Source: Octopus bimaculoides (lineage: Eukaryota). Taken from it: a DNA stretch of 64,000 nucleotides. Where the stretch lies: the NCBI RefSeq assembly GCF_001194135.2, contig NC_068981.1:2408575-2472574 (forward strand). The letters run 5' to 3'. The position numbers and the translations under genes were made by a program. Below, piece by piece: positions 9,825 to 59,203 of the stretch; the stretch's first letter is position 1; the number at the start of each line of letters is the position of its first letter. A model generated the notes under the pieces. That model was not told the origin of the DNA. It saw only the letters and a program-made list of their open reading frames with translations, and ran no database searches.

Positions 9825-10121
9825 NNNNNNNNNNNNNNNNNNNNNNNNNNNNNNNNNNNNNNNNNNNNNNNNNNNNNNNNNNNNNNNNNNNNNNNNNNNN
9901 NNNNNNNNNNNNNNNNNNNNNNNNNNNNNNNNNNNNNNNNNNNNNNNNNNNNNNNNNNNNNNNNNNNNNNNNNNNNNNNNNNNNNNNNNNNNNNNNNNNN
10001 NNNNNNNNNNNNNNNNNNNNNNNNNNNNNNNNNNNNNNNNNNNNNNNNNNNNNNNNNNNNNNNNNNNNNNNNNNNNNNNNNNNNNNNNNNNNNNNNNNNN
10101 NNNNNNNNNNNNNNNNNNNNN

Positions 10122-10155
<34 letters not shown>

Positions 10156-11060
10156 ATCATGTTTCTATCTCCAGTTCTCTCCCTCTTTGTCTCATTTCAT
10201 TACTCCTCTGCTATCTTTAGATATTTTGGCTTCAAGAGAAGACGTTGCTCTGTCCCAAAATGAAAACATTTTGATTTGGTTTCTGAATGTGTGCAATCAA
10301 AAACTGAACAGGTTACTCAGCTTGTCACCAATATACCGCTCACTGCTAAGGAGTATACTGATCCAACTAATTGTGTTTAAAGCTACTACTGTAATAAGCT
10401 GGTGTCCCATTATGTTACAATTATATTTTGTCTTCGTCTCATTAGATACAGCAAGACTTGATTATTGTAGCTGAGTTGAATAACTCACCTGAAATGGAAT
10501 TTGCCTTCAAGACAGTGACTGTGATGCTGGACAATGATATTTTTTGACAATTACGTGTTGGATTTTCACTTGTCCCTTAATTTGTGCTGTACAATTAACT
10601 TTTCTTTAGTTCAAAAGACACTTTTCAGCTGTTTCTCCCCTGCAAGTTTTATGTCTTCATGTCTGGTCACACTTCAGTTTCATTGAGATCACTTTCATTC
10701 ACAATAAATGAAGTTGACATTATTTTTAAGTTGATCTCATGAATGGAAAAGAAAAAAAAACCCACAAAAAGTACAAAAGATGAAATTATCCAGGAAAAAA
10801 AAAACTCGTATCTCCCTAAGGAAAGGAAGAAAAAGATTAAAAAATGGAGGTGGGAATTAAACAGCAGAAGGTAGTGGTGGAGAGGTTGTACACCCCAGAC
10901 AAATGGCGTGTTTAGCTGCACCTTTTGGACATGATTGCAAAAGCATTTCTGCAGAGAATGACCAGCAACACTCGCTGCAACATCCACTCTCACCTCATGA
11001 AATATCAACAAAATAGATGTTCATGAAATGCTTCTTTTCTTATTTATATAGATATATATA

Positions 11061-11628
11061 CGAGGGGGAGTCAAAAAGTAATGCCATTTTGTTTAGGACA
11101 GGTATAATTATGAACACAGGAACATGTATCATACATCAAAATGAAGCTGGAACCCTGTGGATCACATCCCTACTTCTCAACATAGTCACTGTTTCTCTCA
11201 ATAGCAATGTTCCACCTTCGAATGAGAGAATGTATCCCTGCCCCGTAAAATTCTGTTGACTGTTCTTTGAGCCACTTCTTCACTACAGTTTTCACTTCCT
11301 CATCACTTGAATAATTGAGCGCCTTCAGACTATCATCTCTTCAGCCCCTTGAAAGAGGGTTTGAGAGGCAAACATTATTCCAGTGACGAGGAAGTGAAAA
11401 CTGTAGTGAAGAAGTGGCTCAAAGAACAGTCAACAGAATTTTACGGGGCAGGAATACATGCTCTCATTCGAAGGTGGAACATTGCTATTGAGAGAAACGC
11501 TGACTATGTTGAGAAGTAGGGATGTGATCCACAGAGGACCAGCTTCATTTTGATGTATGATACATGTTCCTGTGTTGGTAATTATACCTGTCCTAAACAA
11601 AATGGCATTACTTTTTGACTTACCCTCA
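11061..11628. mobile_element. Mariner-derived foldback element: two inverted copies of the transposon right end
   Basis: TA-flanked CGAGGG... ends; 255-bp arms (11061-11315/11374-11628) with 14 differences by manual count. 11319-11519 encodes APSDYHLF...RRWNIAIERNADYVEK*, the mariner DD34D C-terminus. Confidence 0.92.
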
Positions 11629-11659
11629 TATATATATATTTTATACATTTTCATTTATT

Positions 11660-18357: not shown

Positions 18358-18867
18358 TTCCTTCCTTTCGTCTATTTTCAGATATTCTTTTACTTTTTGT
18401 TTGTTTTCGATTCGTTAATTGGTACTATTCATAACTGTCAGTAATTTTTTTTCTTCTTTTTTTTTCCCATTTATAAATCAAATTATTTTCTGGTTTCAAA
18501 TTGTTATTGTCTTTCTGTGTTGTAGTAGTAGTAGTAGTATGTTATAATCTTGATGTCCATGTCTGCAATCTAGATCAAATACTACTTATTGAAATTATGT
18601 ATCTCCAAGCTAATCAACTTTTCAGTGTTCTCATTCTCACATCACTTCAGTGTTGCTATCTCACACTATTANNNNNNNNNNACACACACACACACACTCT
18701 ACACTCGAAACGTTAATAACTCGGTTTAGAAAAAAAACAGCCATGATAAACGTTTTCAAGTTCATAGTTAGAGACAAGTATGATAATGCCTCAAACATAA
18801 CGGGGCAGCGTTATGTGTCGAGGGTAGTTCCACTTCCCTGCAGCTATTAGATTTGATGTGTATTCTT

Positions 18868-20581: not shown

Positions 20582-23500
20582 GTAATGTAATATTTTGGCT
20601 TCTATTTCCTGTTTTGTGGTGTAATAAAAACGTTTATTTCATGTTATTTTGCTTTATGAAATTATACATAATTGGAGTCCAGATTCCAACAGACACTTGG
20701 AGTCAGGCCAGCTCTATGTCAAACTGTCCAACCCATGCCAGCATGGAAGGCAGACGTTAAACGATGATGATGATACATATATATATATCGTCGTCATCAT
20801 CGTTTAACGTCCGCTTTCCATGTTGGCATGGGCTGGACGGTTTGACTGAGGGCTGGCATGCCAGAAGGCTGCACCAGACTCCAATCTGATCTGGCAAAGT
20901 TTCTACAGCTGGATGCCCTTCCTATCGCCAACCACTCTGAGAGTGTAGTGGGTGCCTTATACATGCCACAGGCACGAGGGCCAATCAGGCAGTACTGGCA
21001 TCGACCACGCTTGAATGGTGCTTTTTACGTGCCACCAGCATGGGAGCCAGTCAGTCGGCACTGGCAACAATCACACTTGAATGGTGCCTTATACATGCCA
21101 CCGGCATGAGGGCCAATCAGGCGCTACTGGCAATAATCACACTTGAGTGGTGCTTTTTATGTGCGACCAGCACGGGAGCCAGTCAGCTGGCACTGGCAGG
21201 CATGCCACGTTTTCACCTCTTCAACAAGATATCTGCTCCTCTCTCTCTCTCTTTCTCTATCAGAGTTTCTTATTCCTCCAATCCATACCCCTCTCAGTTG
21301 AGGGGTATTATCTTGCAAGTACTCAGTTGTCTCACAAGTGCTGGTGTCATGTAAAAAGCACCCAGTATACTCTGTTAAATGGTTGGCATTAAGAAGATCT
21401 TGCAGCTGTAGAAACCTTACCAAAATTGATACAGAGCTTAGGAGAGCAATCTCACTCGTCGGTTCTTGTCAAACTGTCCAATCCATGCCAGCTGGAAAAA
21501 AGGACACCAAATGATGATGCTTCTGTATATACATGGCACTTTGAGCAAGTGTCTATTGTGTTCACCAAAACCTTGTGAATGGATTTCATAGATGGAGAAA
21601 GAAGCTGTGTGTGTGAGCGATCTCTTTGTCTTGACATTAGTGTAGCCATCATACAAGTTATGTCATTGGTTTTCAGTCTGCAAAACCATTTTGTCTTTAA
21701 AAACGCATGCAATATTTTAAGATTCAAACCTTAAAAGCATGCTTTGAATAGAGAGAGAGAGAGCGAGAGAGATGAACATAATTATAACACTGCTCATAGA
21801 TAAGCTGGGTGCCTGTTATCTACATATCTGGAGGTGATGAAGTTGGTGGTTTCTATGCCAGCAATGCGTTCAGGTTGAGCTGACAAAGGCTCAATGACAT
21901 CTCGCTCTCTCTCTCTCTAATCTGCAGGAGATTAATCACACAGTATTACAATAACATGACTCACACTCACTGTTGACTTTATCTATATATCTACACAGTT
22001 ATTCAGTTTTTATGATAGAGGATCTTGATCTTTAAAACCTATCCAAGTTAGAAATATCTTTGCCCCTCCACCACTCCAAGTTACATGTAGCAGTAAGGTA
22101 ATACTGTGTGATTAATCTCCTGCAGATTAGAGAGAGAGAGAGCGAGATGTCATTGAGCCTTTGTCAGCTCAACCTGAACGCATTGCTGGCATAGAAACCA
22201 CCAACTTCATCACCTCCAGATATGTAGATAACAGGCACCCAGCTTATCAGTAGGGTTAGACTTCTATCTATGAGCAGTGTTATAATTATGTTCATCTCTT
22301 TCGTTCTATATTCAAAGCATGCTATTTTAAGGTTTGAATCTTTAAATGTTGCACGTGTTTTTAAAGAGAAAATGGTTGTTGGATTTATCATTTCTGAGGA
22401 TGGTTTCTTGTTGACTAACGTTGACTAATGATGTGGTAGTTATTTCTTATTGTTCCCAACAACTTAGAAATGTCGGAGTTGAATGCATGCACACATCCAT
22501 ACACATACATGCAGATGTCAACTGTCACAATTTTCATCATCATCATCATCATCATCGTTTAACGTCTGCTTTCCATGCTGGTGTGGGTTGGATGGTTTGA
22601 CTGAGGTCTGGAAAGCCAGCGGCTGGACCAGGCTCCAATCTGATCTGGCAATGCTCCGACAGCTGGATGCCCTTCCTAATGCCAACCACTCCGAGAGCAT
22701 AGTGCGTGCTTTTTTGGGGCTGTAGTTTTGTGAAAGATACTAGACTTGCAATGAATGGCTATCCCGAAATGTCATCGAGTTAGTCTCTCCTATTGCAACA
22801 TGATGTTGCTAAAACAATAGACACATCAACACTTAATGTCCATCTTCCATACTAGCATAGGTTGGGCAGTTTGATGCTAGTCCCTGAGACCCCTTTTGGG
22901 GTCTCAGGGTGTAGCCTTCCTGAGCTAGTTTTCCACCACATTTCTTAAAAATCGTGGTTGAGGGCTTGGTCTCGGGACCACTCATGTCTAGAAACTGCGG
23001 GTGGCGGTAAGCAAGGGCATACTCCCTGTAGAGAATCCAGCTCCAAAAAAGCAAAGGAGAATGGGCACCAGCCAGCCCAAAGGTTGGAGTGGGCTGCACC
23101 TGCCTACCTCGGTTGCTATGGCATTGAAGTAGATCCAGCCACCCCTGTTAACGGGGACAAAACCTGGATTTAAAACACTGCATGATGATGATGGCAAGCC
23201 AGAGAACTGCATCAAACTTCACTGTCTGCTTTAGCATGGTTTTTACAGCTGGATGCTCTTTCTAATGTCTACCACTGTATAGAGTAGACTGGGTGCTTTT
23301 ACATGGTACCAACACCATCTGGGGTCTGTGTTGGTGTGGTTGTTACAGTTGGATGATCTTTCTAATGCTAATGACTTCATAGAGTGGACTGGGTGTTTTT
23401 TACATGGCACCAGTACATACATACATACATACCAACACAAGGAATATTTGTGGAGCAATCCCATTTAAACTTCTATCAAGTGCAAACTTAACAGATCTAA

Positions 23501-29500: not shown

Positions 29501-32500
29501 GGCACATAAAAGCACCCATTACACTCTGAGTGGTTGGTGTTAGGAAGGGCATCCAGCCGTAGAATACCATGCCAAATCAGACTGGAGTCTGGTACAGTCT
29601 TCCAGTGTGCCAGCCTGGTCAAACTGTCCAACCCATGCCAACATGGACAACGGACATTAAATGATGATGATGATGATTGGACCCTCATAGCCATTTGATA
29701 TTTTTAAAAATCCAATTACATTTTTATAATTAGATATCACTAGGAATTATATTTTGTGTATTGTAGAAATATGAGCAATTCATTGCACATAAATTTTATC
29801 AACAATGGATCCCTAAGAGTCATATGGGTTCCAATTGAAAACCACTGGTCTAGGGCAACTCTCTTTTATGTATTAAATGATTATCTAAAAGATACTAAAA
29901 TTGTAATCCCAAATGAATTGAAAATGTCATTTTAATTGTAATTTTTCCAGTTATAGATAAGAAAGGAACACCTCAGAAGAGAAAGCGTGGGAGTATTCAA
30001 TTAGATAGTTCTCCTACGAGCGGGTCAAGTGTTACACCTCGAACACCTGTAAGTGGCCAAAGACTGATCCCTTTATCTGAACGTCAACAAATGGCATTAT
30101 TGATGAAAATGACAGATGAATCTTCACAAGGGGGTAGGTTGATATAAACACCTTTTGTTTTCGTTTTGTTTTTCATTGATCTTGAAATTTCTTGTTTTGT
30201 TTTTTGTTTTTTTTTAAAGTTGAAGATCTGAATATCGACAAAAATAATATGAAGTAACTTAAGACTAACATAGTAATGATTCATTATTAGATTTTGGTGA
30301 TAAACAGGGGTGATGTTAGTTTTTTTACTTGAGGTGGTAATGATTACTGGCTTAAATCAACATAATCTCTAATGGCTAAAGAGGTATGTGTGTATGAAGC
30401 AGAAAATTTGGTTCCTAGTAAGAACGGGGGACAACCTGAAAACAAACTAAATGTTGAAACAATTATATATTTAAAGCCCTGAAGATAAATGTTCGCAAGA
30501 TGTGGGCTATAGTTTATTGCTTTCTATTTTCCTTAAAAAAATAGCTTTTGGGGAGAGAGGGGGTGGGGTGATGAATTTTGTTCAATAAGAATAGTTACTT
30601 TTAAGCATGATTGTATGTATGTGTGTGTTTGTATATATATATATATATATTTTTTTTTTCTTTGATACATATATATATATATGTAGATAATGTTTTTAAT
30701 TTTGCTCTTTAAAGCAACAGATTCTTCTCCCAAATCATTGTCACCTGTGATGTCCGCTAAGCGAACGCCTGGTGATAAAAGAGTGCATAAGCGAAATGAG
30801 CATGGAGAAACGCCTTTACATTTGGCTGCAATCAAAGGAGATCCGAAACAGACTAAAAAATTGATTAAAGCTGGAGCTGATGTAAATGTTAAAGATTTTG
30901 CAGGTAAAAATTCCAATATTTCTTCAATATTTTCTCTGGTGTCATGATTTTCAGATTTGATGGTTCCAGATATGATTACTTTTGTGAAATTTCGTGTGTT
31001 AATTTGGTTACAATTTCAAAGAACTTCATAGATATTTTTGATACCAGTCTGTCCAAAAACCACATAAAAGTGTTTTGTATCATTAATGAAAATTTTAACA
31101 ATTGTTTTAGTCTATGAATAACAATATACGATTTCAATAAATAGAAATTGAATTATAATTTTATTGTGTTATATTGAAGACTGTAGATATGTATGCTAAA
31201 TGGCTGTACAGATGTTTCTCACAATTCTTCATATAGTCAGCATTTAATGTCTGTTTTTCCCTGCTGGCATGGTTTGGTCAGATCGACAGGAGCTGGCAAT
31301 TCAGAAGACTGTACTAAGCTTTGACATGGTTTCTATCCCTGGATGTCTTTCCTAACACCAGCCACTTTACAGATAATACTAAATGGTTTTTTTCCCCCAC
31401 ATAGCACCAGCATGGTCACTAAGTAACTTGCAAGGCAAGGGCCCTTAGATGAGTTGGGAAGTAGTATTAAGAGAAGGGGTTTGGTACTAGGAGATGATAG
31501 GTTAAAGTATGGTGGAGGGTTGGAAACAGCTATCTTACTGTAGAAGAGCTACATGGCTACTCCATAGAAAGAGAGAAGAGACAAAGATTGACAAAACAAA
31601 AAACATATAAAACATACAGCGAAGAAACGTCCTGAATATCAAAAGGAGTAACCTAGAAGTATCAGACTTGCAGGACAAATTCATTTTGGATAGAAGGTTC
31701 TGTTAGTGATTGTACAGATGCTTAAATGGTTAATATAAATATAGAATCAAAAGTAGATGGAATCTGTGTGGAAAATAAATAAATAAAAATGTTATTAAAT
31801 TCAGCTAATGAAGGGAAATAATTCAAACAGGTAAATTTGAAGAAGAGACAAAAGGTTAATGAGAAATGTAATGATGTATTTTTAAAAAATGATTATGAAC
31901 TTGGGTGCCTATTACAGCCTCGGGAGAAAAAAAACTATTAAAAAATTCAAATTTTAGACTCATTTACAATTAAGAGTTGATTAGATAGCATGAGAAATGA
32001 TTTTCCAGACAAATTGACCAAAGTAGAAAAATATGTTTGAATTTACGGATAAGTCTTACACACAACTAAATTACATGAAATATGAAAAATATAACAAACA
32101 CATTCTTTAGATCACTGGTTCTCAACCGTTTTTACGTATGGACCCCTTTGATTCCTAATTAATTCGGATGTATCCTCCTATCCATTCAACGTTTAAAAAA
32201 ATCATATTATATTTTTATAGTTAAATATTTTTGGAAATTGTATAAGAAAAATTGTTAAAATATTTTGTGCATTGTAGAATTATAACCAATTTATTGCACA
32301 TGAATTTTAATCACAAAATCTTTTTATGGAACCTCAAGGGTCATGTGGACCCTGCTTGAAAACCACTGCTTTAGATCAATGGGTTAAGTTTTTAAAAAAG
32401 CCTTAGTGAAATAATGTATAAAAATACACATTGATCAGTATCAATATCTGTAATAGTTATCAACATTCAAAAGTATATACAAGCATACATGCACAAGGGA

Positions 32501-32547
32501 AAATACAATTAAATATATACCAACAAATATATCCCTAATAGTTAATA

Positions 32548-32619
<72 letters not shown>

Positions 32620-32710
32620 ACATTTTCATGTTAAATATTGACAAAATCATTATACACATTAATGGATAAATATAAATACTCAAATATTGTCACATGTGCA
32701 TACATGTATA

Positions 32711-32752
<42 letters not shown>

Positions 32753-33098
32753 CATACACACATGCACACACACACATATCAGCATCATCATGGCATGTGT
32801 GCATATATGTATGGCTTAGTGGTTAGGGTGTTGCACTCTCAATCACTAGATCATGAGTTCAGTTCCTAGACCAGGTTCTATATTGTGTTCTCGAGCAAGA
32901 CACTTCATCTCATGTTACTCTGCAATCACTTCGACACCTGACACATGGCACATCTGTGGACCTCTTCAGACAACTCCGATTTGATGAAGAGAGTGAGCTA
33001 ATGTGCAGCACAAACATTTGATCACTGTAAATGATCATATGCAGGTCATTTGGCAAAAGCTGAATGCCCTAACGTCATCTTTGACAGGAGAGTCCGTC

Positions 33099-33131
<33 letters not shown>

Positions 33132-36100
33132 GTATACATGCAGTGGTGTAGTGAAAACCTTGATAGATCAAGAAATAATAAAAAGTAAAATGAAATTTTT
33201 GTGTTTTTTTCTAAATAACTAAAATGGTCCTTCCACAACATAATCACTACACACATACACACACTCGTACACATTTGCATATATAGCTCACTAATTACAT
33301 TAAAGATTAAATACATTCTTTAAATATATTTATATTAATGAGGCCCTTTGGTAGAATAGTTTCCATTTGAAATAAATGAGTTTTTAATTTTCCATAAAGG
33401 TTGGACTCCTCTCCACGAAGCATGCACCCGTGGTTGGTTAATCATTGCTAAACACCTATTGAAAGCTGGTGCTAATGTAAATGTTCATGGCTTAGAAAAT
33501 GATACTCCTCTTCATGATGCATCTGCCAGTGGACATCAAAAGGTAAATTTTCTTCTTCTTACAAACTAAGCTAACATTATTAATATTCTGTTGTGTTATC
33601 ATATTGTATTAATATAGCACCAATATTGGTGGTGAAGTATATTTCTATAAACATTGTTTACGCAATACAAAACATAGGTCGAGTTTATGCAGGCAAGTAA
33701 CAGCTCCCTTGAAACCTGAAAAGTCCTGTATTTAATTGATCAACCTGTCAGTCTTATTTAATGAATCCAGTGGATTCTAGGTGACTTCTTCACCGACTAA
33801 AAAAAAGGGGTTGTTTTTTTCTTTTTTTTTTTTACTTATAGTTTGAGCTTAGAATTGAGAAAACAATGGTTGTCGCTGTTTTTAACATATTTAAAAAGAA
33901 AAAAGAAGGAAAGTTGAAGTAATCATTTCTATGTGAAAGCTAATTAAAATGATGTTATACTCGTGGGTGTGATTACTTCCGAACCTTGGAATTTGGACAC
34001 AGCAATCTGCAGTGGACTTTAGTAGCAGTTGCTTATTCAACAGCTATGAAAGTAACTACAGCTACTAAATACAAATATCTGAACAAGTATGCAGGTATAA
34101 CTGAATGTTTAAGAAGTGTCAAAATAATGCTGGTGTGTGTGAATCATCATCATCATCGTTTAACGTCCGCTTTCCATGCTGGCATGGATTGGACAATTTG
34201 ACTGGGGACTGGCGAACCAGAAGGCTGCACCAAACTCCAATCTGATCTGGCAGAGTTTCTACAGCTGGATGCCCTTCCTAACGCCAACCACTCCGAGAGT
34301 GTAGTGGGTGCTTTTACATGCCACCGGCATGAGGGCCAGTCACACAGTACTGGCAACGGCCATGCTCAAAAAGGTGTTTTTTACGTGCCACCTGCATGGG
34401 AGCCAGTCCAGCGGCACTGGCAACAACCTCACTCGGATGATTTTCTAACAAATAAATGAAGCCCAAAGTTTTCTCTATTCACAAGTTGGTAGGTACACAC
34501 TGAAATATGCAAAAAGAACCTAATCTCAATATGTAATAATACTTAAATGATCAGATCCGTTCAGCTGAATATTTTGTTTAGACAATTGCACAATATTTCA
34601 TTTGTATTCATTCTCCCTTACCAAATCTGTGACATTACAATTCTTTTTTTCTTTTTTTCCCTTATATTTTATTGTTTCTTAATCGTCTGTCGTTTCTGAA
34701 ATGTCTGTTCTTTATTTATTTCCAGCTTGTTGAATTACTGTTGAAGCACGGGGCTAACCCTCTTCAATCTAACAGTAGAGGCCAAACACCTATGGATGTT
34801 GCTGCATGTTCCGATACAGAAGAGCTGTTAAGAAAAGAGATGTCCTCATCAAGCAGTGATAGTTCAAGTGTTGATGATACTCGTTCTCCGACATCTCCTG
34901 AAAGTACTTCTTCGGCTAAAGAAGAAGACCGTACTGCAGATTCAGAAGGTACTTTGCAAACTTACCTGATTAATGTAGCTTTTAAGAGGAAAAATCAACA
35001 AAACTGCAATCAGGATATCTGATATTTGTGTCTAAGTCAGGGGCCAGCAAAGTGGTCAGTATTGATCCCTTGGGGTAGGGTGTCCATGTGGTTATCCAAG
35101 AGGTCAATGATTTTAAGCTGAATTATTAGCAAACTGAATCTGGAAGAGTTTGGGTAATTTAAGGCTTAAACTCACTAATTTCCAGCCAAATATTGATGCA
35201 ATATAAACTAGTATTCACCAAACATATATTTCACATTAAATATTCCAACTGTATCAATGTATTATGACTGGATTTTTATAGTATTTAAGTATTTTCATTA
35301 AATTTATTTCCTTCATCATCATCATCGTTTAACGTCCGCTAGCATGGGTTGGATGATTTGACAGAGGACTGGCGAATCAGATGGCTGCACCAGACTCCAA
35401 TCTGATTTGGCAGAGTTTCTACAGCTGGATGCCCTTCCTAACGCCAACCACTCAGAGAGTGTAGTGGGTACTTTTACGTGCCACCGGCACGAAGGCTAGT
35501 CAGGCGGTACTGGCAACGGCCACGCTCAAAATGGTGTATTTTATGTGCCACCTGCACATCATACTTTCTAATTTATTTTAGAAATTTATAAGATGGGAGT
35601 CAACAAGTTATCAAGGTTTCCATGAATGGGTCAATGATTTTTAGAAGTTTGCCAACCCCTGTACTATAATTACTCATGTCATGCTTACAGTTACACTTTT
35701 GTCCTTTGACTGCTGACTGCAAAATGTTTTGTCAGTGTTGAAAGGAGATGATAATGTATCGATGGGTTATTTGAGTTATATGCAATTAGCTGAGGTATTT
35801 GTTGTGGAGACTCCATTATCATCTATAATAATACTCTTGTGTCTTTCTCCATCACATATGAATGAGAAAGGAAGGAGTGATAGATGAATAAGGAAGGGGT
35901 GATGGGAAACTTGGTAGCGGGATGATGGAAGTTCTACGGGGAAAGAAAAAATCAAACAGCGTTTCAACTCTGTGTATGTAAAAGGGAGGTATGTGAATGT
36001 TTGTGTGTGTGTATATGTGCAATCGAAGTGGGATGGTGAACATTCAATGCTGAAAGGAAGGTGGAGGTATTGTTTTCAGTTGTGTTTGTTTGTCCGTGGA

Positions 36101-39100
36101 CAAGATATCTCAAGAACTGCTGGATGGATTTGGATGAAACTTTCAGGGATGTTTGGCCTCGTGACTGGCACAAACTGATTAGATTTTGGGATTGATCCAA
36201 TACCAGACAAGGATTCTGGATTGGGTTCATTTTTAGTATTCTCATTTGTGAGAGCAGTTGAGTTTATTTCAGATATTCTCATTCTAAAAATTCTCTCTGG
36301 TTAATCGTTGAGAAGACGTTGGTGTTGCCTTGGTGGAGGTGTACGCTCTATGAGTGCTCTTGTTATTCTTGATTTTAATCTCCTTCCTTTTACATTGTAA
36401 CTCGTTATAACACTGGACTTAAATGACTTTGCCTTTCATCTTTTCAGGGTGAGTAAAACAAGTACCAGTTGAGCACTGGGGCTGATGTAATTGACTTACC
36501 TCCTCCCCCGAACTTGCTGGCCTTGTGCCAAAATTTGAAACCATTATTTACTTTATTTTATTTTATTTTATTTTTGTAGAATTGTCTCCGAGAATTACTG
36601 GTTCATCTGCTTTGAAATGGGAGAGAAGTGTTGCATCATCAACTTCAGGCAGCAGAAGATCCCTGTTGCCCAAGTCTCCAGAGAAGACTGCTTCCCCTCG
36701 TCTCTTTCTTAAACTTGTCAAGGATGTGCCCTGTAGTGGAGAAACGTCTGAAAAATCTAAAGATACAACTGAAACACAATACAAAGCATACAGTGTAACT
36801 GTAGAACATAAAGACTGCATCTCCTTTGTAGAAAGTAACAGTAGTAATGACAGTGATTTATATGAACCTCGCATTTTGGAGCGTGCTAGTGATTTAGGTA
36901 GTACATCGGTTAGCAATTTATCAGCTAGTATGGTTGCAGCAGGTATGAAAGAAAGTGGTCAGTCAGACAATCGTGTATCCGGCATGACTATAGCACCAGA
37001 AACTTTACCGCATCAAGGAAGCATTAACAATAAAGTTTGTGTTGGTGATAGTCAACTGAATGATGAAGCTAATAAAAGCTTTGGTGAGACAGTTTCATCT
37101 CATTCTGTGCAGACATTTACTCCACAGTTTGAGGACATCAGTGATCCTGAAGATGAAACTGGTATGTCTGAAATTCTTAAACAGCAAATGCCAGTACAAA
37201 TAAGAACTGATTCTAATTGCATTCCACAAAGTAAAGAACTGGACACTAGTAATATTATTACTACATCTCAATCAAAGTTGAAATGTTTAACAACATCCTC
37301 ATCCTCATCATCATCTGATTTTCCACATGAATTATCATTAATATCATCATCAATAACATCATCCAATTCTCATGGTAATGCTATTAGCTCAGGAACAACA
37401 AATAATAATAATAACATTCAAGGAGATATACACACAGTAGACACAAACATTATTTCAAATACTTCAATAAGAAGGCATTCTAGTAATAATATTACAAATT
37501 CTAGTACGTTGGTAACAAGCGGGCCAGCTAGTCAAATACCCACCAAATGGGAGCTCCATTCTTGTCCACCATCTACTGATGACCATCTTTGTGGGTTAAC
37601 CTTAAAATCTGAGGGTTCTCGTACTTCTTCTTCACCTACTAGATCTGAGAAAGATAGATTTGCTTTAAAATCAGACAAAGAACCTAGATCTTCATCCTCA
37701 TCCTCATCATCATCTTCATCTTCCTCATCATCATCATCGTCATTATTAAAAGTACCACCTTTGAGAATAATAATCCCACCAAAACAAACATCCTCTATGG
37801 ATTCAGATAACTTGAAAATGCTCCTAACTAAACCAGCATTACCGTACGTTTTAAACCCAACACGAGAAAACAATTTAGAAGAGCAAAATAATGAATGTCA
37901 TATAGCCTCCCAAGCATCATCAAGGGCCTCGAGTCCAACTTCTTCACGCCCTTCATCTGCTGCTAGTGATCATGCTGCCTCATCTACTGCTGGCAGCAGT
38001 GTAACAATGGCTGTCCCTCTGACAACAACGACTTTACATATGACAGCCAATCAGTCAGCTTCGTCTGGGGATAAAGCTGTTTCCATTACTAACACCAACA
38101 CAGCTACTACTGTTACAGTTACCACCACAGTAACTAGTATTAACAGCAATAATTCACCCGATACAGATATTAAGTCAAATTTCCATGGAAGCAACAAACT
38201 ACCTACTAACTCTGCCTCAGTGACAATTACCACCACATCTAGTGCAACTTCATCCACCACCACCACCACCAGTAACTCTGAGAAAACTAGTCAAACACAT
38301 GCTACACGAGATACTGATTCTCTTGTTGTGAAAGAGAAAGATGAATTAATAAAACTAAAAGACAAAGAAGATACTAAGGAAGAGAAAGAAGAAAAGACCA
38401 CACAAAGAATTACACGATGTCTCCGTTCACATACAGCACAATTACAACAACAGAAAAGAGAGCAACATTCTGATAAACAAGGTATCATCTCTCTCTTTCT
38501 CTCTCTCTATTTTTTTCTCTCTCATACCAAAGTCAAATCATTTACAAGTTCTCAGCACTCATGAAAAAACACAGCTAAAAGCCTTTCTGTTTTTCTAATG
38601 TTTATTCTGACAAAATGTGATCTCTACTGAATTTACCCACAAAATCTGTTTTGAAAAATTGTTCTTTTTTTCAGAGCCAATAAGTATTTCAAGGTTGAAC
38701 AGTTCCTAACCTTTTGCAATGCCCCCATACAGCCACCTGTTCCAATATTGGCAACACTTCTCTCATTCTATTATTGAAGTATTACATAGTGTATCATATA
38801 TGTCAGTTAAAGGTAGGGTGGCAGTGTCAATGACCTTTGCATTCCCTCCCAAACTGGTGAGATTTATGCAGCTGATACACAGGTGGAATAGTTTGCAGGT
38901 CTGATTTCTATAAGTAAAAAATGTGGGCAGTGAAGAAGAACCAGGAATCTGGTCTGTGTGCTTCTAATTCAGTGAGTGAATTATGCAAAAGGCATACAGG
39001 GGCAAAGTGGTGGTTTTGAACAAAAATGCTTGTTATGTCTACTTTTAGACTCATTATAAACCATCATATCTAATCCTTAGTCTCCAAATCTGCATTCCTC

Positions 39101-44370: not shown

Positions 44371-45897
44371 NNNNNNNNNNACACGTGTGTGTGTGTGTGT
44401 GTGTGTGTATTTGACCCCCAACATCGCTTAACCTATGTTGGTGTGTTTATGTCCTTGTAACTTAGCAGTTCGGCAAAAGAGACTGGTAGTATAAGTACTA
44501 GGCTTACAAAGAATAAGTCCTGAGGTTGATTTGTTCAACTAAAGGCGGTGCTCCAGCTTGGCTGCAGTCAAGTGACTGAAACAAGTAAAAGAAAAGAAAA
44601 TTATGACTATGATCTGTAAATGCAGTGCACCATTACAAAGGATCTATAATGTCACTTTGAAATGGTAAATGGTTAACACAATGCTTTTAAGATCTCTCTG
44701 CCTCTTTCGGTACCATGTCCAGAATGTAAGACATAGGTGATCATGTCCTGCCACGATTCTGTTCTTTGTTTTCTTTAACAGTTCCATTTCCTGATGTTTA
44801 ATGCCTCTTTCTTCCAACCAGCTCATCAAACTTAACATCCACATCATCCCTTTCTTTCCTTTGCTTCTTTTCCCTTTAATCTTTCTGGTCATCACTAAAT
44901 TCTCCAGGCCTTCTTTTCTCATCACATGACCAAGAAATCTCAATTGCTTGGCCCTCACCTCACAAAGCAATTTTTTTATTTACCACAGCTCAGGTAATCA
45001 CTTCTTCATTAGACACTTTGTCTGTCTGTGCTGTCCTCAATATTCTCCTTAAGAACCACATTTCACAGCTCTCCAAGCAGCTTCTCACTTCTGATGTTCT
45101 GGACCATTTCCTCACTTCTGTACACAACAGTTCAGTATGTGGATCTTGGTCTTGATGCCCAGTGTATGATTTCTCATGTGTTATACAATTTTGAGAATGT
45201 AAATTTTGCCAGCACCAGCCATCTTTTGATCTCCTTCACACATCTTGCGTCTCCTGTGATCAAAGTTCCCAGGTAGTTGAAGGATGATACCTGCTTAATG
45301 ATTTGATTGTTCACTTTCAGCATGTATTTTGAGCTTCTCTTTGTCACTACCATCCGTTCTGTCTTCTCTTGCAACGTAAACTCTCCTGAGTGGTTGGCGT
45401 TAGGAAGGGCATCCAGCCATAGAAACCCTGCCAGATCAGATTGGAACCTGGTGCAGCTCCTTGCCTTACCAGTTTTCAGTCAAACCATCCAACCCATGCC
45501 AGCATGGAAAGCAGACGTTAAATGGTGGTGATAGTGATGAAGAATCTTATTTAAATAATTTCCATTTAATAACAGTATATTCAAAAGCTATTCAATGGCA
45601 TATATGCAAGTAAAAAGTAATTATTATTATTATTTTCATTATTAAGGCAGCGAGCTGGCAGAATCGTTAACACGCCAGGCGAAACGCTTAGCAGTATTTC
45701 ATCTGCTGCTACGTTCTGAGATCAAATTCCGCTGAGGTCGACTTTGCCTTTCATCCTTTTCGGGGTCGATTAAATAAGTACCAGTTACGCACTGAGGTCA
45801 ATGAAATCGACTATCCCCCTCCCCCAAATTTCAGGCCTTGTGCCTATAGTAGAAAGAATTATTATTATTATTATTACTACTACTACTACTGCTACTG

Positions 45898-45933
<36 letters not shown>

Positions 45934-47363
45934 AGGCTTGTAGCTGGCAGAATTGTTAGCACACTAACAAATACTCAGTGACATTTCTTCTGAGCTTATT
46001 TTCTGAGTTCAAATTCCTCCTAGCTCAAGTTTGTCTTTCATCCTTTCAGGGGTTAATAGATTAAGTCCCAGTTGAGCCCTGGAGTCAATGCAATCAACAA
46101 AGCTCCTTCCCCACCAAATTTCAAGCCTTGTGTCACTAGTAGAAAGGATTATCATCAGTATAAACTATTAAATGCTCTGTTAGTTAACAGAGCTGTTGTC
46201 TTGAGATTTGGTGACACGTTTCCTCTGATCTCAAGAATCTTTCTTAGGGTTTCTGCAGGTTGACAATGTGGGTCTCAACTCCAATATCCTTCAACTTCTT
46301 AGGTAGCAGTGTGGGTGTTGGGCCAAGTGTACCTATTACCATAGGAATAATCGTCTCAGTCTTCCCCAATTACTTCACCTCTCTGACAAAGTCCTGATAT
46401 TTCTCAGTTTTCTCACTATCCCCTCTATTATGCTATTGCAAAGTCTATGATCTTACACTTTGTTTCTTTTGTTCTCTATAATCATATCTGGTCTTCTTGG
46501 TAACTACTATTATTATTATTATTATTGTTCAGTAGTTTTATTTTTATAACGTGCTTTCACTTCACTACCGAGCGCAGCTCTGTGTACCTTGGGTATGTGC
46601 TGTGGTTTGCTGTGATGCTCTTATGGTTACTGTATTGAAAGTGTTTTGCGTAGGATGTGTGCAGTGCCCAGTAGTGCAATTTTCTCTGTTATATATATTT
46701 GTAAGTCCTGGTGTTTTTGTTATGTATTTGTCTGAATATTTTTTTATTATACCTAAGGCACCTACTATGATAGGAATTGTTTCTGTTTTTAGATTCCACA
46801 TTCGAGTTACCTCTATTTCCAGGTCTTTGCATTTTGAAAGTTTTTCCATTATTATTATTATTATTATTATTATNNNNNNNNNNNNNNNNNNNNNNNNNNN
46901 NNNNNNNNNNNNNNNNNNNNNNNNNNNNNNNNNNNNNNNNNNNNNNNNNNNNNNNNNNNNNNNNNNNNNNNNNNNNNNNNNNNNNNNNNNNNACTATCCC
47001 CTCTATTATGCTATTGCAAAGTCTATGATCTTACACTTTGTTTCTTTTGTTCTCTATAATCATATCTGGTCTTCTTGGTAACTACTATTATTATTATTAT
47101 TATTGTTAAGGTGGTGAGCTGACAGAATCATTAGTATGCTGGACGAAATGCTTAGTAGTATTTCACCCATCACTGTGTTCTGAGTTCAAATTCTGCTGAT
47201 GTTGATTTTGCCTTTCATCCTTTCAGGGTTGATAAAATAAATACCAGTTAAAAACTGGGGTTGATATAATCGACGCTTCCCCCACCTCCCCCATGCTGCC
47301 CTTGTGGCAAAGATTTGAAATAATTATCATAATTGTTGTTATTTATTATTATAATTCTTCTGA

Positions 47364-47394: not shown

Positions 47395-50300
47395 TATAAT
47401 TTCAGGTGGATTAGACACTCAACCACAAATAAATGACACACTTAGTTTAAAAGGGCAAAAATTTCCTCCAACACTTACATCTTCTACAACTAGTGCTGTG
47501 TCATCAGCTGGAGAAGAATCTGAAGACCTTAATATCCATCCAAGGAAAAGAAAGTTACGGCCAAAAGGTGACCAAACCCAAATTTCAGAGGCAACTACTT
47601 CTCACCCGATCATTCTTGAAAAGCCTCCAAATCCATACAAAACCTATCTTTCAATAAGGAAACAGGTAAGAAAAAAGGTGATAACAATTTTCATTATTTT
47701 TTTTACTTTCTATAACCTATTCTCTATTCATCAAGTGCTACTACTGTATTTGGTCCTCATGTATTATCCAACTGCCTGCTGCTACATAAAAACCATGCTA
47801 CCAATACCAAACCATATTTCTAACAGTTTTGATTAGATATTAGATGACAGTAGTGATTAGAACTTAGGCCAGCGACATAATTAATGTTGTTAGTCTTCTT
47901 TTTTTTCTTCTTTTTTTATGGGGCAGTGTATTCAGTTGTGACTGTACAGATGTGACCTCACCCCACCTCACCTTCCACACATGGGAGCGTGGTCGTTCAT
48001 GAAAATGTTGCAGTGTGGATTTCATCATCTTCGTTATTTAATGCCCATTTTCCATGCTGGCATGGGCTGGACAGCTTGACAGGAACTGACATGGCCAGGG
48101 CCCACTCTGGGTTCCATAGTCTGTTTTTGGCATGATTTCTACAGCTGGTTTCTACTGCCTTTCCTAATGCCAACCACTTTACAGAGTGTACTGGGTGCTT
48201 TTTGCGTGGCACCATCACCCGTGCTTTTTACGTGGCACCATCACCAGTGCTTTTTACGCGGCACCATCACCAGTGCTTTTTATGTGGCACCATCACCCGT
48301 GCTTTTTATGTGGCGCCATCACCAGTGCTTTTTATGTGGCGCCATCACCCGTGCTTTTTACGTGGCACCATCACCCGTGCTTTTTCNNNNNNNNNNGCGG
48401 CACCATCACCCGTGCTTTTTACGTGGCACCATCACCCGTGCTTTTTATGCGGTACCATCACCCGTGCTTTTTACGCGACACCATCATCAGTGCTTTTTAC
48501 GCGGCACCATCCCCAGTGCTTTTTATGTGGCACCATCACCCGTGCTTTTTACGTGGCACCATCACCAGTGCTTTGGTCTTAGGATATCAATTCTGTTGTG
48601 GTGGGTTGGTCTTTTTGAGTACAGAAATATGCCACATATTTTGATTCTTTGTCCAGCATTTAGAGATGACCGTTCAATACTTTGCCCACGTCTTTCAGGG
48701 TCTCCCTCTCCCACAATTTCCCCCCTGCGCAATGGACACTTCGCTATGCATTCACTGATGTTGTCTATATTTCCACTGATTTCCTCTCTTATGTGGGCTT
48801 CAATGAATGTGGAAAGGCAGTGAGAATGAGTGTGGAATTCTGTCTCATGGGAGATTTTCTGAAATGCAATGCTTGCATCATGTTTGTGTGTCTGTGGTGA
48901 GGGTTACCTGTCATCATTGAAAGAAAAATTAACGGAGAATAAGTGATGAAAACTATACGATAATGGAAATTTAGAGCACAACTTTTGTTTGTATTTTATT
49001 TATAATAATTTAAAACCAATTTTTGTATTTCAACTGTTTGTTTATAAATAGAAACAAGTTGAAAATAATTATATTAGACTTAAAATTTGAGTGCTAGACT
49101 TAATCCATCCCCTACTTTAACACCACTACTTGGCACATGTGCTTATCTTAGGTGCAGCCTACTCTTTTGCAAGGTCACTGGTTTGAGGTTACCTTTCTCC
49201 CCCCCTTCTGATTTAGGCCCTGTAAAGAGTCATAAGGGCTGCTTTCCCTCTTTGATTGAAGTAAGGAAAGAAATTAAAAACTAACTGCAATGTAATATGT
49301 AACGAAAAGAAATAAGAACAAAACTTGTTAAAAAAATAAAAATTATTAAAAAGCATGAATTTTATGCAAATAGGAGCAGTTTAATGATTGCATTCTTATA
49401 AAGATTTAAACCTCCGCTAGTGTGAATAGATTTTGTAAGACGGTACACATTTGAATGTTTGTTGTTCAAGTAACAATAAATGTCATCTTATCAAGAAAAT
49501 AATGTCTCTACCAGTTCTTGAAGACCTACATCCAGTCACAGCACTTCAACACACTATGATAGCTTTTATTGGCAGTTTTTAGTACAGGTTATTGTAAATA
49601 CTATTTTGTTTGTTAGAAATTAAGCTGTATCTTCCTAGTTTTTGCTTTTTTTTTCTAAATGTACAGAGAATAATGTATTCTACTAAGATGTAGCATTTTA
49701 CTCATTTCTGAACTAAAAATTAAATGGTTTGACGATTGCTAAGTAAACATAATCAACTGGCACCTATGTATATATTATATAGTAATGTATAACATTTCAT
49801 ATCAATAATAATATAAGCAAGCACATTAAGTTTGCTCTATAATGTGATGTATTGTAATAATGTTTGATAATTCCCAATTGATCCCATTCAAATAAATTGT
49901 GTTCTGTTTCATTGATTTAGGAAATTTGATATGCTGTTGCTGAATTGCTGAAGGGTGATTAGTTTTTGTGCAAAAATATTCCATCCAGATTTCTTTAATC
50001 AACCATTTGAAAATGTCTTGTCTTAGACATTTACATATGTTTTATTATATGCAGTCTGTGTCACTCATAGTATCATCTCTTAATATTTTTTGTTTTTTTT
50101 TAATTTTTTTTTGTTTTGCTTTGTTTTTTTTTGTTTTTTTTTAATTTNNNNNNNNNNNNNNNNNNNNNNNTTTTTTTTTTTTTTTTTTTTTTTTTTGTTT
50201 CATCGAATGGTATGGAAAGCGAGTGTTATGTGGTAATGTTATTTGTTTATTGAATTTCTGATTTCTGTACGATTTGTGGTTTCGACCCGATAACGTTACT

Positions 50301-56800: not shown

Positions 56801-59134
56801 CATATTAAATTTCTCTCTGAACTCCTTTCTAACTCTTGCTTAGCTGACAGCATCTCTGCACATGGCTCACCCAGCTCTCAAGCCATTTTCTTCTAGTTTA
56901 CTTAGCCATTACATAACCTCAGAATATAGTACTCAGTCAAAGGTCAACAAGTATTTGTACCGTAACTGGATATTTGCTAAGAAATTCTCCTGTAGCTGTC
57001 TCACTCTGTCGAAAGGACATCAGTGGTACTTCATCCTGGTACAAACCGAACCTTCATTTCATCTCAGCTAATTGTTTTTAACCAGTGATGTCATAATAAC
57101 TTTCCTGTTATCTTTACAACTTGTTATATTAGTTTGAAGTATTTGTAGTTGCCCCTTTCTAAAGCACTTCCTTTGTCCTTTTACCAGATGATGATCCTTA
57201 CTCTGATTAGTGTAGAAACCATCTCCCTCTGCTACCTGAGTAACCAGTGTTCCCTGATGGGGTCAGACATGTAATAAATATGTAATTTTTAAATTCTTTT
57301 TTATTCCTTTCTAGGTAGAGGAAAGAGAGAAAAACGTTCGATCACGCTACAATGGCAGACAGTTTATTTCCTGGATTCAAGATGTCGGTGATAAATATGA
57401 CAAGATAAAAGTGAGATCATCTTATTCTCTGTTTTTAAAAAGAAAAAAACCATTGTCTTTTGGTTGGTTTCGTGGGAGTTGTTGTGACATCAGATCAAGC
57501 GTTTATATATCTCAGCTCAGGTGCCACGTAAAAGGCACTAATTTCACTCTGCTGGGTGGTTGGTGTTAGGAACGGCATCCAGCTGTAAAAATCCTGCCAA
57601 ATCAGTCACAGAAGTCTGGTGCCGGCTTCTGCCTTGCTGACTCTTATGAAACTGTCCCACCCATGCCAGCATAGAAGGCAGACGTCAAACAATGATGATG
57701 ATGAAGGAGCAGAGTATGCTATGCAAATGTGCAACAACATGCAATGTGGAAAATTGAATTATTTACAAAACAAATTTCTTTAGTAGGTGTTGCTGCCAGA
57801 TAAAAACACACCCATGCCGGTGCCGCATCAAGAATACTCAATACACTCTGTAAAGTGGTTGGTGGTTTGGAAGGGCATCCAGCTGTAGAAACCTTGCCAA
57901 AACAAATCTGGAGCCTGGCGCAGCTCTCCGGTTTGCCAACTCCTGTCAAGCCATTCAACCCATGCCAGCATGGAAAACAGTTGTTAAATGATGATGATGA
58001 TGATATAATAGTTTGGGTAATCAGCTTAGTATTATCAGGAGGTTCCCTTCCTCTGGCCCCTTACTGCCACGATAAATACAGCCTGTCAATGTCAACAATG
58101 GTTACTACAGCTTAAACACTATTATTAGTCCTTTTTGTTGTTTAACTTTGTGTGTGTAGGCATTGTTTTAGGAGGTTAATTTCTGAATATAGTAGGGGTC
58201 TGTTTTATCAAAAGGGGTTATCTTTAAGATGTCAGTTAATTTTGATGTTTCTTTCTCCCACTTCATAATGTCCTTTTAGTGAAGTATACTGCAAATGTTT
58301 TTCTCCTTGTTGCTGTTCTTTGTCTGGTTCAATCTTATGACTATTTACTTTGTTTGTTGTGTTTATGAGCCTGGCTTTGTTTCACCCCCCCCCCCTTTTT
58401 TTTTTTCATTTTGGTTTCCGTTTATCTACAACATCTGTTTTTCTTTTGTTGTTGTTTTACTGTCTTTATTTCTGTTATCATGTTTGTACAGTGAGTGTGT
58501 GTGTGTGTATGTGTATATATATATATATATATATATACTTCTCAAGAGTACAGAAAGTTAACATTCAGTGCTAAGCATAATTTGAAAGTCAAAATAAATG
58601 TTGTGTGTGTGTGTGTGTGTGTGTATAAAGAGTTCTTCTTTGTTTGCAGATAACAACTTATCAGAGCTTATCTCCACGCACTGAAGGGGAACATTTTTTT
58701 TTAAATACTGACTTCCTTTTAAACACAATTATTTTATTTACAGACATAGGAAATTTAGGAACAGGTGTGGATCTCTCTTGACTTGGAGTATATTGAATGG
58801 ATGTTTACTTTAAGGGATCCCGAAATGTAGCACAGGCATGGCTGTGTGGTATGAGGCTTGTTTCCCAATCACATGCTTTTAGTTTCAGTCCCATTGCGTG
58901 GTATCTTGGCCAGATGTCTTCTATTATATCCCTGAGCCAACCAAAGCCTTGTGAGTGGATTTGGTAGATGGAGACTATTTGACTGCGGTCATGCTGGAGT
59001 ACTGCCTTTAGTCGAGCAAATTGACCCCAGGACTTATTCTTTGTAAGCCTAATACTTATTTTATAAGTCGCTTTAGCTGATATGCTAAGTTACGGGATGT
59101 AAACACATCAACATCAGTTGTCAAGCGATGGTGC

Positions 59135-59203
<69 letters not shown>

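What the first reader, a model, noticed from the sequence alone, without database searches (positions are those of the whole stretch)
21684..22377. Perfect 151-bp inverted repeat nested in older, diverged arms
The inner 151 bp match with zero differences, including microsatellite length. The outer 115-130 bp have several substitutions, different (GA)n lengths and a 20-nt insertion ending in a repeated TATC. This sharp step in identity implies recent arm-to-arm gene conversion, selection for a perfect duplex, or an assembly artefact. The arms match no other repeat in the window, and I found no TSD or coding potential. It lies in the first coding intron, so it is transcribed and would form a long perfect dsRNA.
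Basis: partly seen in the sequence, partly recalled or inferred. Interest (0 to 1): 0.7.

Follow-up and report, generated by a model that had tools for sequence, protein, structure and literature searches.

The report
Hairpin repeat with homogenised inner arms
A 694-base non-coding inverted repeat upstream of the coding exons of an ANKRD11/12-like gene has arms that are identical near the loop and about 7-9% different at their outer ends; one arm was most likely recopied from the other, which is a known and fairly ordinary process.

Summary
Arms 21799-21949 and 22098-22248 are 151 nt and 100% complementary around a 148-nt spacer. They are nested in diverged outer arms (115 vs 129 nt). The substitution-free zone is wider than reported: it starts at 21768 and spans 182 nt, broken only by the 20-nt indel. 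All 7 substitutions lie in the outermost 84 nt (Fisher p=1.7e-4).

It is the longest exact repeat in the window. It is not at an assembly gap and has no other copy in the 64 kb. I found no target-site duplication, Rfam family, coding potential or protein relative. No genome of the same or a close species was reachable, so copy number and orthologues stay untested.

Best reading (about 0.5): a real, probably function-less inverted duplication whose loop-proximal part was recopied arm-to-arm, by gene conversion or replication template switching. The 20-nt difference is a microhomology (GATA/TATC) deletion. This is a small version of known palindrome concerted evolution.

Rivals are a transposon-family structure, a nested young foldback, assembler collapse of a few arm variants, and a selected hairpin RNA. 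"First coding intron" could not be verified. If the region is transcribed, the expected fate is ADAR or Dicer processing. Interest is low to moderate.

The parts
21684..21767 (.). Outermost left arm (diverged). It holds all 7 substitutions, the 2-nt indel and the longer (GA)n tract.
   Evidence: Arm alignment and run-length list; the repeat finder I2, I5.
21768..21798 (.). Left arm, 31 nt with no substitution, lying outside the 20-nt indel. It pairs with 22269-22299.
   Evidence: clean run of 31 before the indel; I3.
21799..21949 (.). Inner left arm, 151 nt, identical to the reverse complement of 22098-22248. GC is 45%.
   Evidence: (I1).
21950..22097 (.). Spacer/loop, 148 nt. It is unique, shows no appreciable self-complementarity, and has 34.5% GC.
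   Evidence: no other copy in the window.
22098..22248 (.). Inner right arm, 151 nt, the perfect complement of 21799-21949.
22249..22268 (.). 20-nt segment present only in the right arm (AGTAGGGTTAGACTTCTATC), bracketed by a 4-nt direct repeat (TATC at 22245-22248 and 22265-22268). This is the signature of a microhomology deletion in the left arm. There is no other copy in the window.
22269..22377 (.). Outer right arm. It pairs with 21684-21798, and its (GA)n tract is short and degenerate (22293-22313).
   Evidence: (I2, I3, I5).
21746..21774 (.). Motif g: GAATAGAGAGAGAGAGAGCGAGAGAGATG. It forms a small internal inverted repeat with 21896-21922 inside the left arm (23 nt, 96%). The same motif recurs at 22125-22151. 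It is low complexity, so it is weak evidence for homology.
   Evidence: I7, D2; look-alikes at 10132 and 38486.

Best explanation
This is a real, non-coding, single-locus long inverted repeat (an inverted duplication of about 270 nt around a 148-nt spacer). It lies upstream of the coding exons of an ANKRD11/12-like gene.

The two arms arose together and diverged to about 7-9%. Later the loop-proximal 150-180 nt of one arm was rewritten using the other arm as template. Two mechanisms would do this. One is intrachromosomal gene conversion during repair of a break in one arm. The other is a replication template switch across the hairpin (quasi-palindrome correction). The copied tract is bounded on the inside by the non-homologous spacer. 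On the outside it ends in or next to the (GA)n tract or the 20-nt heterology.

The 20-nt difference is a slippage or microhomology deletion between two GATA/TATC repeats in the left arm. Once the outer parts had accumulated indels and about 9% mismatches, mismatch-repair anti-recombination would exclude them from further exchange. The identical core would stay recombination-competent. This would keep the step sharp.

Shown: the anatomy, the significance of the step, the uniqueness in the window, and the absence of coding or RNA-family signal. Inferred: the copying event itself, its mechanism, and neutrality. If the host pre-mRNA includes the site, the RNA would fold into a stem of about 265 bp. 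The expected consequence is A-to-I hyper-editing or dicing as a by-product, not a selected function.
For: - The 151-nt arms are 100% complementary, and the substitution-free zone spans 182 nt. All 7 substitutions and 2 of the 3 indels lie in the outer 84 nt. Fisher p=1.7e-4 and P(0 in 151)=4e-5.
- The microsatellite (CT)n length is identical in the inner arms but different in the outer ones. Conversion does this in Y-chromosome palindromes (PMC4233959).
- The 20-nt indel is flanked by a 4-nt direct repeat. It is not templated from anywhere in the window.
- The inner arms are GC-richer (45%) than the outer arms (30-32%) and the loop (34.5%). This is compatible with GC-biased conversion.
- There is no second copy in the window. 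There is also no ORF homologue, Pfam match, Rfam match or vector match.
- A control foldback on the same scaffold (11052-11637) retains 15 arm differences between exact runs of 34-65 nt, so the assembly does not routinely homogenise arms.
- Arm-to-arm conversion and template-switch homogenisation of inverted repeats are documented (PMC3723533, PMC1803023, PMC8604942, PMC8794818).
Against: - No orthologous or allelic sequence could be obtained, so concerted evolution is inferred from a single sequence.
- The draft assembly has 10 N-gaps in the window and one gap-edge duplication. It could have collapsed a few real differences between the inner arms.
- Documented template switching involves arms of about 7-16 nt and spacers of 70 nt or less (PMC8604942), far smaller than here. 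Documented palindrome conversion involves arms of kb to Mb.
- The GC jump at the boundary, and the 20-nt segment that could be read as the loop of an older hairpin, also fit a nested insertion.
- Genome copy number is unknown, so the two-tier structure may have been inherited from a transposon master copy rather than made at this locus.
Confidence: 0.5

Rival explanations
1. This is a copy of a foldback or MITE-type DNA transposon family, and the family's master copy already had perfect inner and imperfect outer arms. The step would then be inherited rather than produced at this locus, and this copy would simply be young.
For: - It is a long-armed, non-coding, AT-rich-ended palindromic element of 694 bp.
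- The same window holds other foldbacks: 11052-11637 with 264-nt arms, plus 58832-59371 and 673-958.
- Absence from 64 kb only excludes a very high copy number.
Against: - There is no target-site duplication and no terminal motif of a known superfamily (inspection).
- There is no second copy in the window or in 20 kb of the related locus L001.
- No related ORF call exists in 5.8 billion or 1.84 billion protein collections that do include raw ORF calls from eukaryote contigs.
- The master copy would still need the same arm-homogenising event, so this rival changes where the event happened, not how.
Confidence: 0.15
2. This is a nested insertion. A young 450-bp foldback (151-nt perfect terminal repeats plus a 148-nt loop, 21799-22248) landed in the 20-nt loop of an older 244-bp hairpin element (21684-21798 plus 22249-22377).
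For: - The perfect tract ends exactly at the 20-nt segment, which would be the old loop.
- GC jumps from 30-32% outside to 45% inside.
- No conversion event needs to be invoked.
Against: - There is no target-site duplication at 21798/21799 and 22248/22249.
- The insertion would have to hit a 20-nt loop exactly, so that old and new arms stay in register.
- The 31 nt outside the junction are also free of substitutions.
- The (GA)n-CGAGA-GATG motif is shared between 'old' and 'new' parts, although this is weak evidence.
Confidence: 0.1
3. This is an assembly artefact. The two inner arms really differ at a few sites, and a short-read graph assembler or gap-filler merged them into one path. The zero-difference result is therefore overstated.
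For: - The window is a gapped draft scaffold with 10 N runs totalling 1385 N.
- It contains a 115-nt exact duplication that begins at the first base after a gap (46993).
- Arms longer than typical read or k-mer lengths are prone to collapse (general knowledge).
Against: - The locus lies inside a 25.7-kb gap-free stretch, 3 kb from the nearest N run.
- The four junctions and both outer arms are unique, distinct sequences, so both arms exist.
- A spacer of 148 nt and diverged outer arms are not what foldback chimeras look like.
- The control foldback kept isolated arm variants between exact runs of 34-65 nt.
- Collapse could hide a few differences but could not create the step.
Confidence: 0.15
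4. This is a functional hairpin RNA, either an endo-siRNA (hpRNA-type) locus or a regulatory ADAR substrate, and its perfect stem is kept by selection.
For: - The predicted hairpin is extremely stable.
- The location is probably within the transcription unit of a + strand gene.
- Long inverted-repeat dsRNA is the main ADAR substrate across metazoans (PMC9989829). hpRNAs are long inverted repeats (PMC10317233).
Against: - The arms match no gene in the window and no protein anywhere, whereas hpRNA arms derive from their targets.
- There is no Rfam family.
- RNA-level selection would tolerate G:U pairs and compensatory changes. It would not require identical DNA, including microsatellite length.
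- Outer mismatches show no wobble bias (3 of 7).
- The repeat is not detectable in 10 kb either side of the homologous exon in a related species, though the orthologous intron was not covered.
Confidence: 0.05

Closest known systems
Palindromes maintained by arm-to-arm gene conversion (human Y/X palindromes P1-P8; long near-perfect inverted repeats of C. elegans): PMC3723533, PMC4233959, PMC1803023
   Same: Both have two inverted arms around a unique spacer. Arm identity is far higher than expected for the age of the duplication. Microsatellite lengths are homogenised along with substitutions. The boundaries between the homogenised part and the rest are sharp.
   Different: The scale differs: 0.15-0.27 kb arms here against kb to Mb there. 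This repeat contains no genes. Only part of the arm is homogenised. Concerted evolution is inferred here from one sequence, not shown by cross-species comparison.
Template-switch homogenisation of imperfect inverted repeats (quasi-palindrome correction): PMC8604942, PMC8794818
   Same: An imperfect inverted repeat becomes perfect in one templated event that uses the other arm. The process can create and maintain long perfect RNA stems without selection.
   Different: Documented events involve arms of about 7-16 nt and spacers of 70 nt or less. Here the tract is at least 151 nt across a 148-nt spacer, so the mechanism would have to operate at about ten times the usual scale.
Foldback / long-TIR MITE transposons (for example the foldback at 11052-11637 in this window)
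   Same: Both are short, non-coding, almost wholly palindromic elements with a small loop, located in introns.
   Different: This repeat has no target-site duplication, no recognisable terminal motif and no second copy detected. Its arm identity is two-tier rather than uniform. The control element is uniformly about 95% identical.
Drosophila hairpin-RNA (hpRNA) endo-siRNA loci: PMC10317233
   Same: Both are long inverted repeats predicted to give a dsRNA stem of several hundred base pairs.
   Different: hpRNA arms are copies of target genes and are independently transcribed, mostly in testis. Here no target homology was found, and expression and small RNAs are untested.
Intronic inverted-repeat dsRNA as ADAR hyper-editing substrate: PMC9989829
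   Same: This is a young, low-divergence inverted pair within about 150 nt of each other, which is the preferred substrate class in all metazoans surveyed.
   Different: Those substrates are usually two independent insertions of a dispersed repeat. This is a single-locus duplication, and editing is untested.

Membership tests
MITE / foldback DNA transposon | Terminal inverted repeats | tested here: met
   The arms are 266/280 nt and reach both ends of the element.
MITE / foldback DNA transposon | Target-site duplication flanking the termini | tested here: not met
   The flanks are ...cagtctgcaa|AACCATTTTG and CAAAATGGTT|gttggattta. No direct repeat of 2-10 nt appears at either candidate boundary. 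A 2-nt duplication could have decayed.
MITE / foldback DNA transposon | Multiple dispersed copies in the genome | not testable with these tools
   None in the 64-kb window or in L001. No genome of this species is in any reachable collection.
MITE / foldback DNA transposon | No coding capacity | tested here: met
   The longest ORF is 75 aa. It has 0 homologues and 0 Pfam families.
Palindrome under arm-to-arm gene conversion | Inverted arms separated by a unique spacer | tested here: met
   148-nt spacer, unique in the window.
Palindrome under arm-to-arm gene conversion | Arms more alike within a genome than orthologous arms are between species | not testable with these tools
   The only related locus (L001) is 75-84% identical in exons and unalignable in introns. 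An internal proxy is met: 0/182 vs 7/77 substitutions.
Palindrome under arm-to-arm gene conversion | Spacer found in both orientations in a population (crossover products) | not testable with these tools
   No population or read data are available.
hpRNA / endo-siRNA locus | Long inverted repeat folding into an extended dsRNA | tested here: met
   MFE -468 kcal/mol, z = -44, a single hairpin.
hpRNA / endo-siRNA locus | Arms homologous to a target gene | tested here: not met
   There is no match in the window. No protein-level match exists for the only long arm ORF. Only protein-level and in-window searches were possible.
hpRNA / endo-siRNA locus | Dicer-dependent 21-22-nt small RNAs from the arms | not testable with these tools
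   No small-RNA data are available.
microRNA or other curated RNA family | Match to an Rfam covariance model at gathering score | tested here: not met
   0 matches at gathering score in the window. The only sub-threshold hit is MIR156 at 21.7 bits against a 62-bit cut-off, E=0.16, driven by (GA)n/(CT)n pairing.
Foldback chimera / assembly artefact | Arms identical over their whole length, little or no spacer, located at a contig end or gap edge | tested here: not met
   The outer arms are diverged and the spacer is 148 nt. The nearest N runs are at 18672-18681 and 44371-44380. Compare the true gap-edge duplicate at 46993.
Foldback chimera / assembly artefact | Not reproduced by independent long reads or PCR | not testable with these tools
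   No reads are available.

The most novel reading that the evidence does not exclude
The perfect 151-bp stem is kept identical because it works as RNA. It could be an intron-embedded hairpin that yields endo-siRNAs. Alternatively it could act as a high-affinity ADAR (or other dsRNA-binding protein) docking site that modulates processing of the ANKRD11/12-like transcript, in an animal lineage that may rely heavily on RNA editing. Recurrent conversion would serve as the maintenance mechanism.
Probability: 0.05. Interest if true: 0.6.

Novelty: new member of a known kind. Interest (0 to 1): 0.25.

Why it matters
If the sequence is correct, the locus is a compact example of partial concerted evolution inside a sub-kilobase inverted repeat. 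An identical core sits in arms that are about 9% diverged, and a microhomology indel lies near the boundary.

Such loci could help measure how short, and how interrupted, homology can be while still supporting arm-to-arm copying in an invertebrate genome. They also show how perfect long RNA stems can arise without selection.

In practice it marks a site that would give a very long dsRNA if transcribed. That dsRNA would be a candidate ADAR or Dicer substrate. The site is also hard to assemble and could be genomically fragile. It does not point to a new kind of element or mechanism.

Tried and rejected
- **Protein-level search for other copies.** I searched with the 75-aa arm ORF. This relies on raw ORF calls from eukaryote contigs, which do exist in the collection (P0070/L001 came from one). 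Result: 0 hits in the word-indexed search and 0 in the exhaustive HMMER search.
- **Exact 24-30-mers of the inner arm.** None found in metagenome, viral or prokaryote contig collections.
- **Orthologous locus.** The big exon gave only distant hits. The ankyrin exons gave one close ORF, P0070 (94% aa). Its locus L001 is too diverged (exons 75-84% nt, introns unalignable). It holds only 946 bp upstream of the PLSERQQ exon and has no copy of the repeat.
- **Larger palindrome rejected.** I tested whether the palindrome extends into the inverted SINE copies at about 21340-21520 and 22483-22720. The 150-160 nt between each SINE copy and the repeat do not align, and the left flank contains the tail of a different SINE.
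- **Templated origin of the 20-nt segment.** There is no other copy in the window on either strand at 4 or fewer mismatches.
- **Vector or adaptor origin.** No plasmid match.
- **RNA genes.** Rfam and tRNA scans were negative.
- **The g/g' motif as proof of shared ancestry.** I downgraded the (GA)n-CGAGA-GATG motif, because look-alikes occur at two other GA microsatellites.
- **ATG exon of the host gene.** Composition and ORF scans gave no convincing candidate.
- **Mariner identity of the 11052-11637 foldback.** A Pfam search of the coding-like fragment found nothing significant.
Full report
**What is there**

Arms 21799-21949 and 22098-22248 are 151 nt, 100% complementary, and 148 nt apart. 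Weaker complementary blocks outside them extend the palindrome to 21684 and 22377.

A global alignment of the left arm against the reverse complement of the right arm shows 7 substitutions. It also shows a 2-nt indel, an 8-nt (GA)n length difference and a 20-nt segment present only in the right arm (22249-22268). That segment is bracketed by TATC at 22245-22248 and 22265-22268.

One refinement matters. The last substitution is at 21767, so the substitution-free zone runs from 21768 to 21949 (182 nt) and is interrupted only by the 20-nt indel. The outermost 84 nt carry every substitution.

**Is it more than chance?**

- The 151-mer is the longest exact repeat of any kind in the window.
- At the outer substitution rate, the chance of 151 clean positions is 4e-5.
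- Fisher's exact test gives p=1.7e-4 (7/77 vs 0/182) or p=2e-3 (7/108 vs 0/151). The boundary was chosen after seeing the data, so these values are somewhat optimistic.
- The upper 95% bound on inner divergence is 1.6-2.0%, against 6.5-9% outside. The inner part is effectively at least four to five times younger.
- As RNA the region folds into a single hairpin of -468 kcal/mol (z = -44).

**Context**

The window is a gapped draft scaffold of a eukaryote, with ten N runs totalling 1385 N. It is densely populated by SINE-like repeats and microsatellites. I think it looks molluscan, possibly cephalopod, but this is recollection and was not tested.

The + strand carries an ANKRD11/12 orthologue:

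| Exon | Coordinates |
|---|---|
| Conserved PLSERQQMALLMKMT motif (opens with a ttttccag acceptor, no start codon) | 29949-30136 |
| Ankyrin exon | 30720-30927 |
| Ankyrin exon | 33390-33545 |
| Ankyrin exon | 34720-34960 |
| Large exon | 36560-38480 |

The repeat lies 7.6 kb upstream of the first of these exons. An upstream ATG exon must exist, but I could not find it. "First coding intron" therefore remains plausible but unverified.

The flanks of the repeat are different repeats: a SINE in minus orientation, the tail of another SINE, and a SINE in plus orientation. The palindrome does not extend into them.

**What it is not**

- There is no second copy in the window apart from (GA)n matches.
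- I found no flanking direct repeat and no recognisable transposon terminus.
- No Rfam family matches at gathering score. The only sub-threshold hit is a (GA)n-driven MIR156 match at E=0.16.
- There is no tRNA-like part and no vector similarity.
- The longest ORF (75 aa, right arm) has no relative in the word-indexed collection or among 1.84 billion representatives. It has no Pfam family either.

The arms therefore do not look like an inverted copy of a coding gene, which is how Drosophila hpRNAs arise (PMC10317233).

**Could it be an assembly artefact?**

The scaffold does contain one clear artefact. A 115-nt exact direct duplicate starts at the first base after the gap at 46874-46992.

The repeat studied here differs in several ways:

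- It sits in a 25.7-kb gap-free stretch.
- Its two outer arms are distinct sequences.
- All four junctions (outer/inner and inner/loop on each side) are unique sequences.

Both arms must therefore exist in the data. A foldback chimera would have no spacer and no diverged outer part.

As an internal control, the foldback at 11052-11637 kept 15 arm differences separated by exact runs of 34-65 nt. The assembler therefore does not routinely merge arm variants. What cannot be excluded is that a few isolated differences inside the inner arms were collapsed. That would turn "perfect" into "nearly perfect" but would not remove the step.

**Most likely mechanism**

I favour an old inverted duplication whose loop-proximal part was later rewritten from the other arm. 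Two documented processes do this:

- Recombinational gene conversion between palindrome arms. This also equalises microsatellite lengths (PMC3723533, PMC4233959). It keeps inverted-repeat structure more conserved than sequence in Caenorhabditis (PMC1803023).
- Polymerase template switching, which perfects imperfect inverted repeats and can create long RNA stems without selection (PMC8604942, PMC8794818).

The tract is limited on the inside by the non-homologous spacer. On the outside it ends in or beside the (GA)n tract or the 20-nt heterology.

The 20-nt difference has the classic signature of a microhomology deletion, with one of two GATA/TATC repeats retained. It has no template elsewhere in the window. 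It is either the barrier at which the tract stopped or a later deletion. The 31 clean bases outside it slightly favour the latter (P = 0.05-0.13 for such a run at the outer rate).

The higher GC of the inner arms (45% vs 30-32%) fits GC-biased conversion. It equally fits a different origin for the inner part.

From established knowledge of homology-length requirements and mismatch-repair anti-recombination, a diverged, indel-rich outer part should drop out of exchange while an identical core keeps exchanging. This would maintain a sharp step. That point is inference.

**Rivals**

- **Transposon family (0.15).** The two-tier structure may be inherited from a master copy. This moves the event elsewhere rather than replacing it.
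- **Nested insertion (0.10).** A young 450-bp foldback may have landed in the 20-nt loop of an older hairpin. This explains the coincidence of boundary, indel and GC jump. It lacks a target-site duplication and needs an insertion exactly in register.
- **Assembler collapse (0.15).** Discussed above.
- **Selected hairpin RNA (0.05).** DNA-level identity including microsatellite length points to recency rather than RNA-level constraint. Only 3 of the 7 outer mismatches are G:U-compatible on the + strand. No target or family was found.

**External comparison**

No sequence of the same or a closely related species was reachable.

- The host gene's large exon found only distant relatives.
- The ankyrin exons found one close ORF, P0070 (94% aa).
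- Its locus L001 is 75-84% identical in exons, has unalignable introns and contains no copy of the repeat. It also stops 946 bp upstream of the PLSERQQ exon, so the orthologous interval was not covered.
- Exact-word scans of metagenome, viral and prokaryote collections were empty.

Genome copy number and concerted evolution therefore remain untested.

**Consequences if transcribed**

The pre-mRNA would carry a stem of about 265 bp with a 151-bp perfect core. Across metazoans, nearby low-divergence inverted repeats are the main substrates of ADAR hyper-editing (PMC9989829). Dicing is the alternative fate. This is an expectation, not a result.

**Verdict**

The explanation is most likely a small-scale instance of known arm-to-arm homogenisation of an inverted repeat, with no evidence of function. 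It is a new member of a known kind and of low to moderate interest. Its main value is as a clean case of partial concerted evolution in a short inverted repeat and as a candidate long-dsRNA source.

Noticed in passing
window 46415-46529 and 46993-47107 (gap 46874-46992): A 115-nt exact direct duplicate whose second copy starts at the first base after an N gap. This is almost certainly gap-edge redundancy left by the assembler or scaffolder.
   Followed up: partly
window 11052-11637: A second foldback with 264-nt arms (95% complementary) and a 58-nt loop. Its termini read ...TATATATA|CGAGGGGGAGTCAAAAAGTAATGCC, and the loop/arm holds a coding-like fragment (SDYHLFSPLKEGLRGKHY...RRWNIAIERNADYVEK) that recalls a mariner transposase C-terminus. 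Most arm differences are adjacent doublets. Pfam did not confirm the mariner identity.
   Followed up: partly
window 48195-48574 and 20951-21198: Two tandem arrays built from an internal unit of the abundant SINE-like repeat. One is a 26-nt unit (GTGCTTTTTACGTGGCACCATCACCC) repeated about 14 times across a 10-N gap. The other is a 66-nt unit repeated about 3.8 times, just upstream of the finding.
   Followed up: no
window 29949-38480 and about 47450-47640, + strand: Exons of an ANKRD11/12 orthologue: the PLSERQQMALLMKMT exon, three ankyrin exons, a 1.9-kb serine/threonine-rich exon, and a probable C-terminal-region exon (HPRKRKLRP...NPYKTYLSIRKQV). The ATG exon was not located.
   Followed up: partly
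L001 947-1134 vs 10013-10269 (window 29949-30136 vs 30652-30907): In the related species, the intron between the PLSERQQ exon and the first ankyrin exon is about 9 kb. In the window it is about 0.6 kb, a 15-fold size difference.
   Followed up: no
window 22249-22268: The right-arm-only 20-mer contains TAGGGTTAG, nine bases of the TTAGGG-type telomere repeat. This is probably coincidence. There is no other copy in the window.
   Followed up: partly
window 21746-21774 vs 21896-21922: Each arm holds its own small inverted repeat of a (GA)n-CGAGA-GATG motif, 23 nt at 96% complementarity in the left arm. The left outer copy resembles the inner copy more than it resembles its own partner in the right outer arm. 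This hints at a second, smaller homogenisation event or a nested mini-element flanked by TA. Look-alike motifs at 10132 and 38486 make this weak evidence.
   Followed up: partly
window 58832-59371, 673-958, 32548-32776: Further hairpin-forming inverted pairs (145 nt at 77%, 80 nt at 85%, and 84 nt at 82% complementarity), made of SINE-like or microsatellite sequence. Foldback structures are common in this stretch of genome.
   Followed up: no
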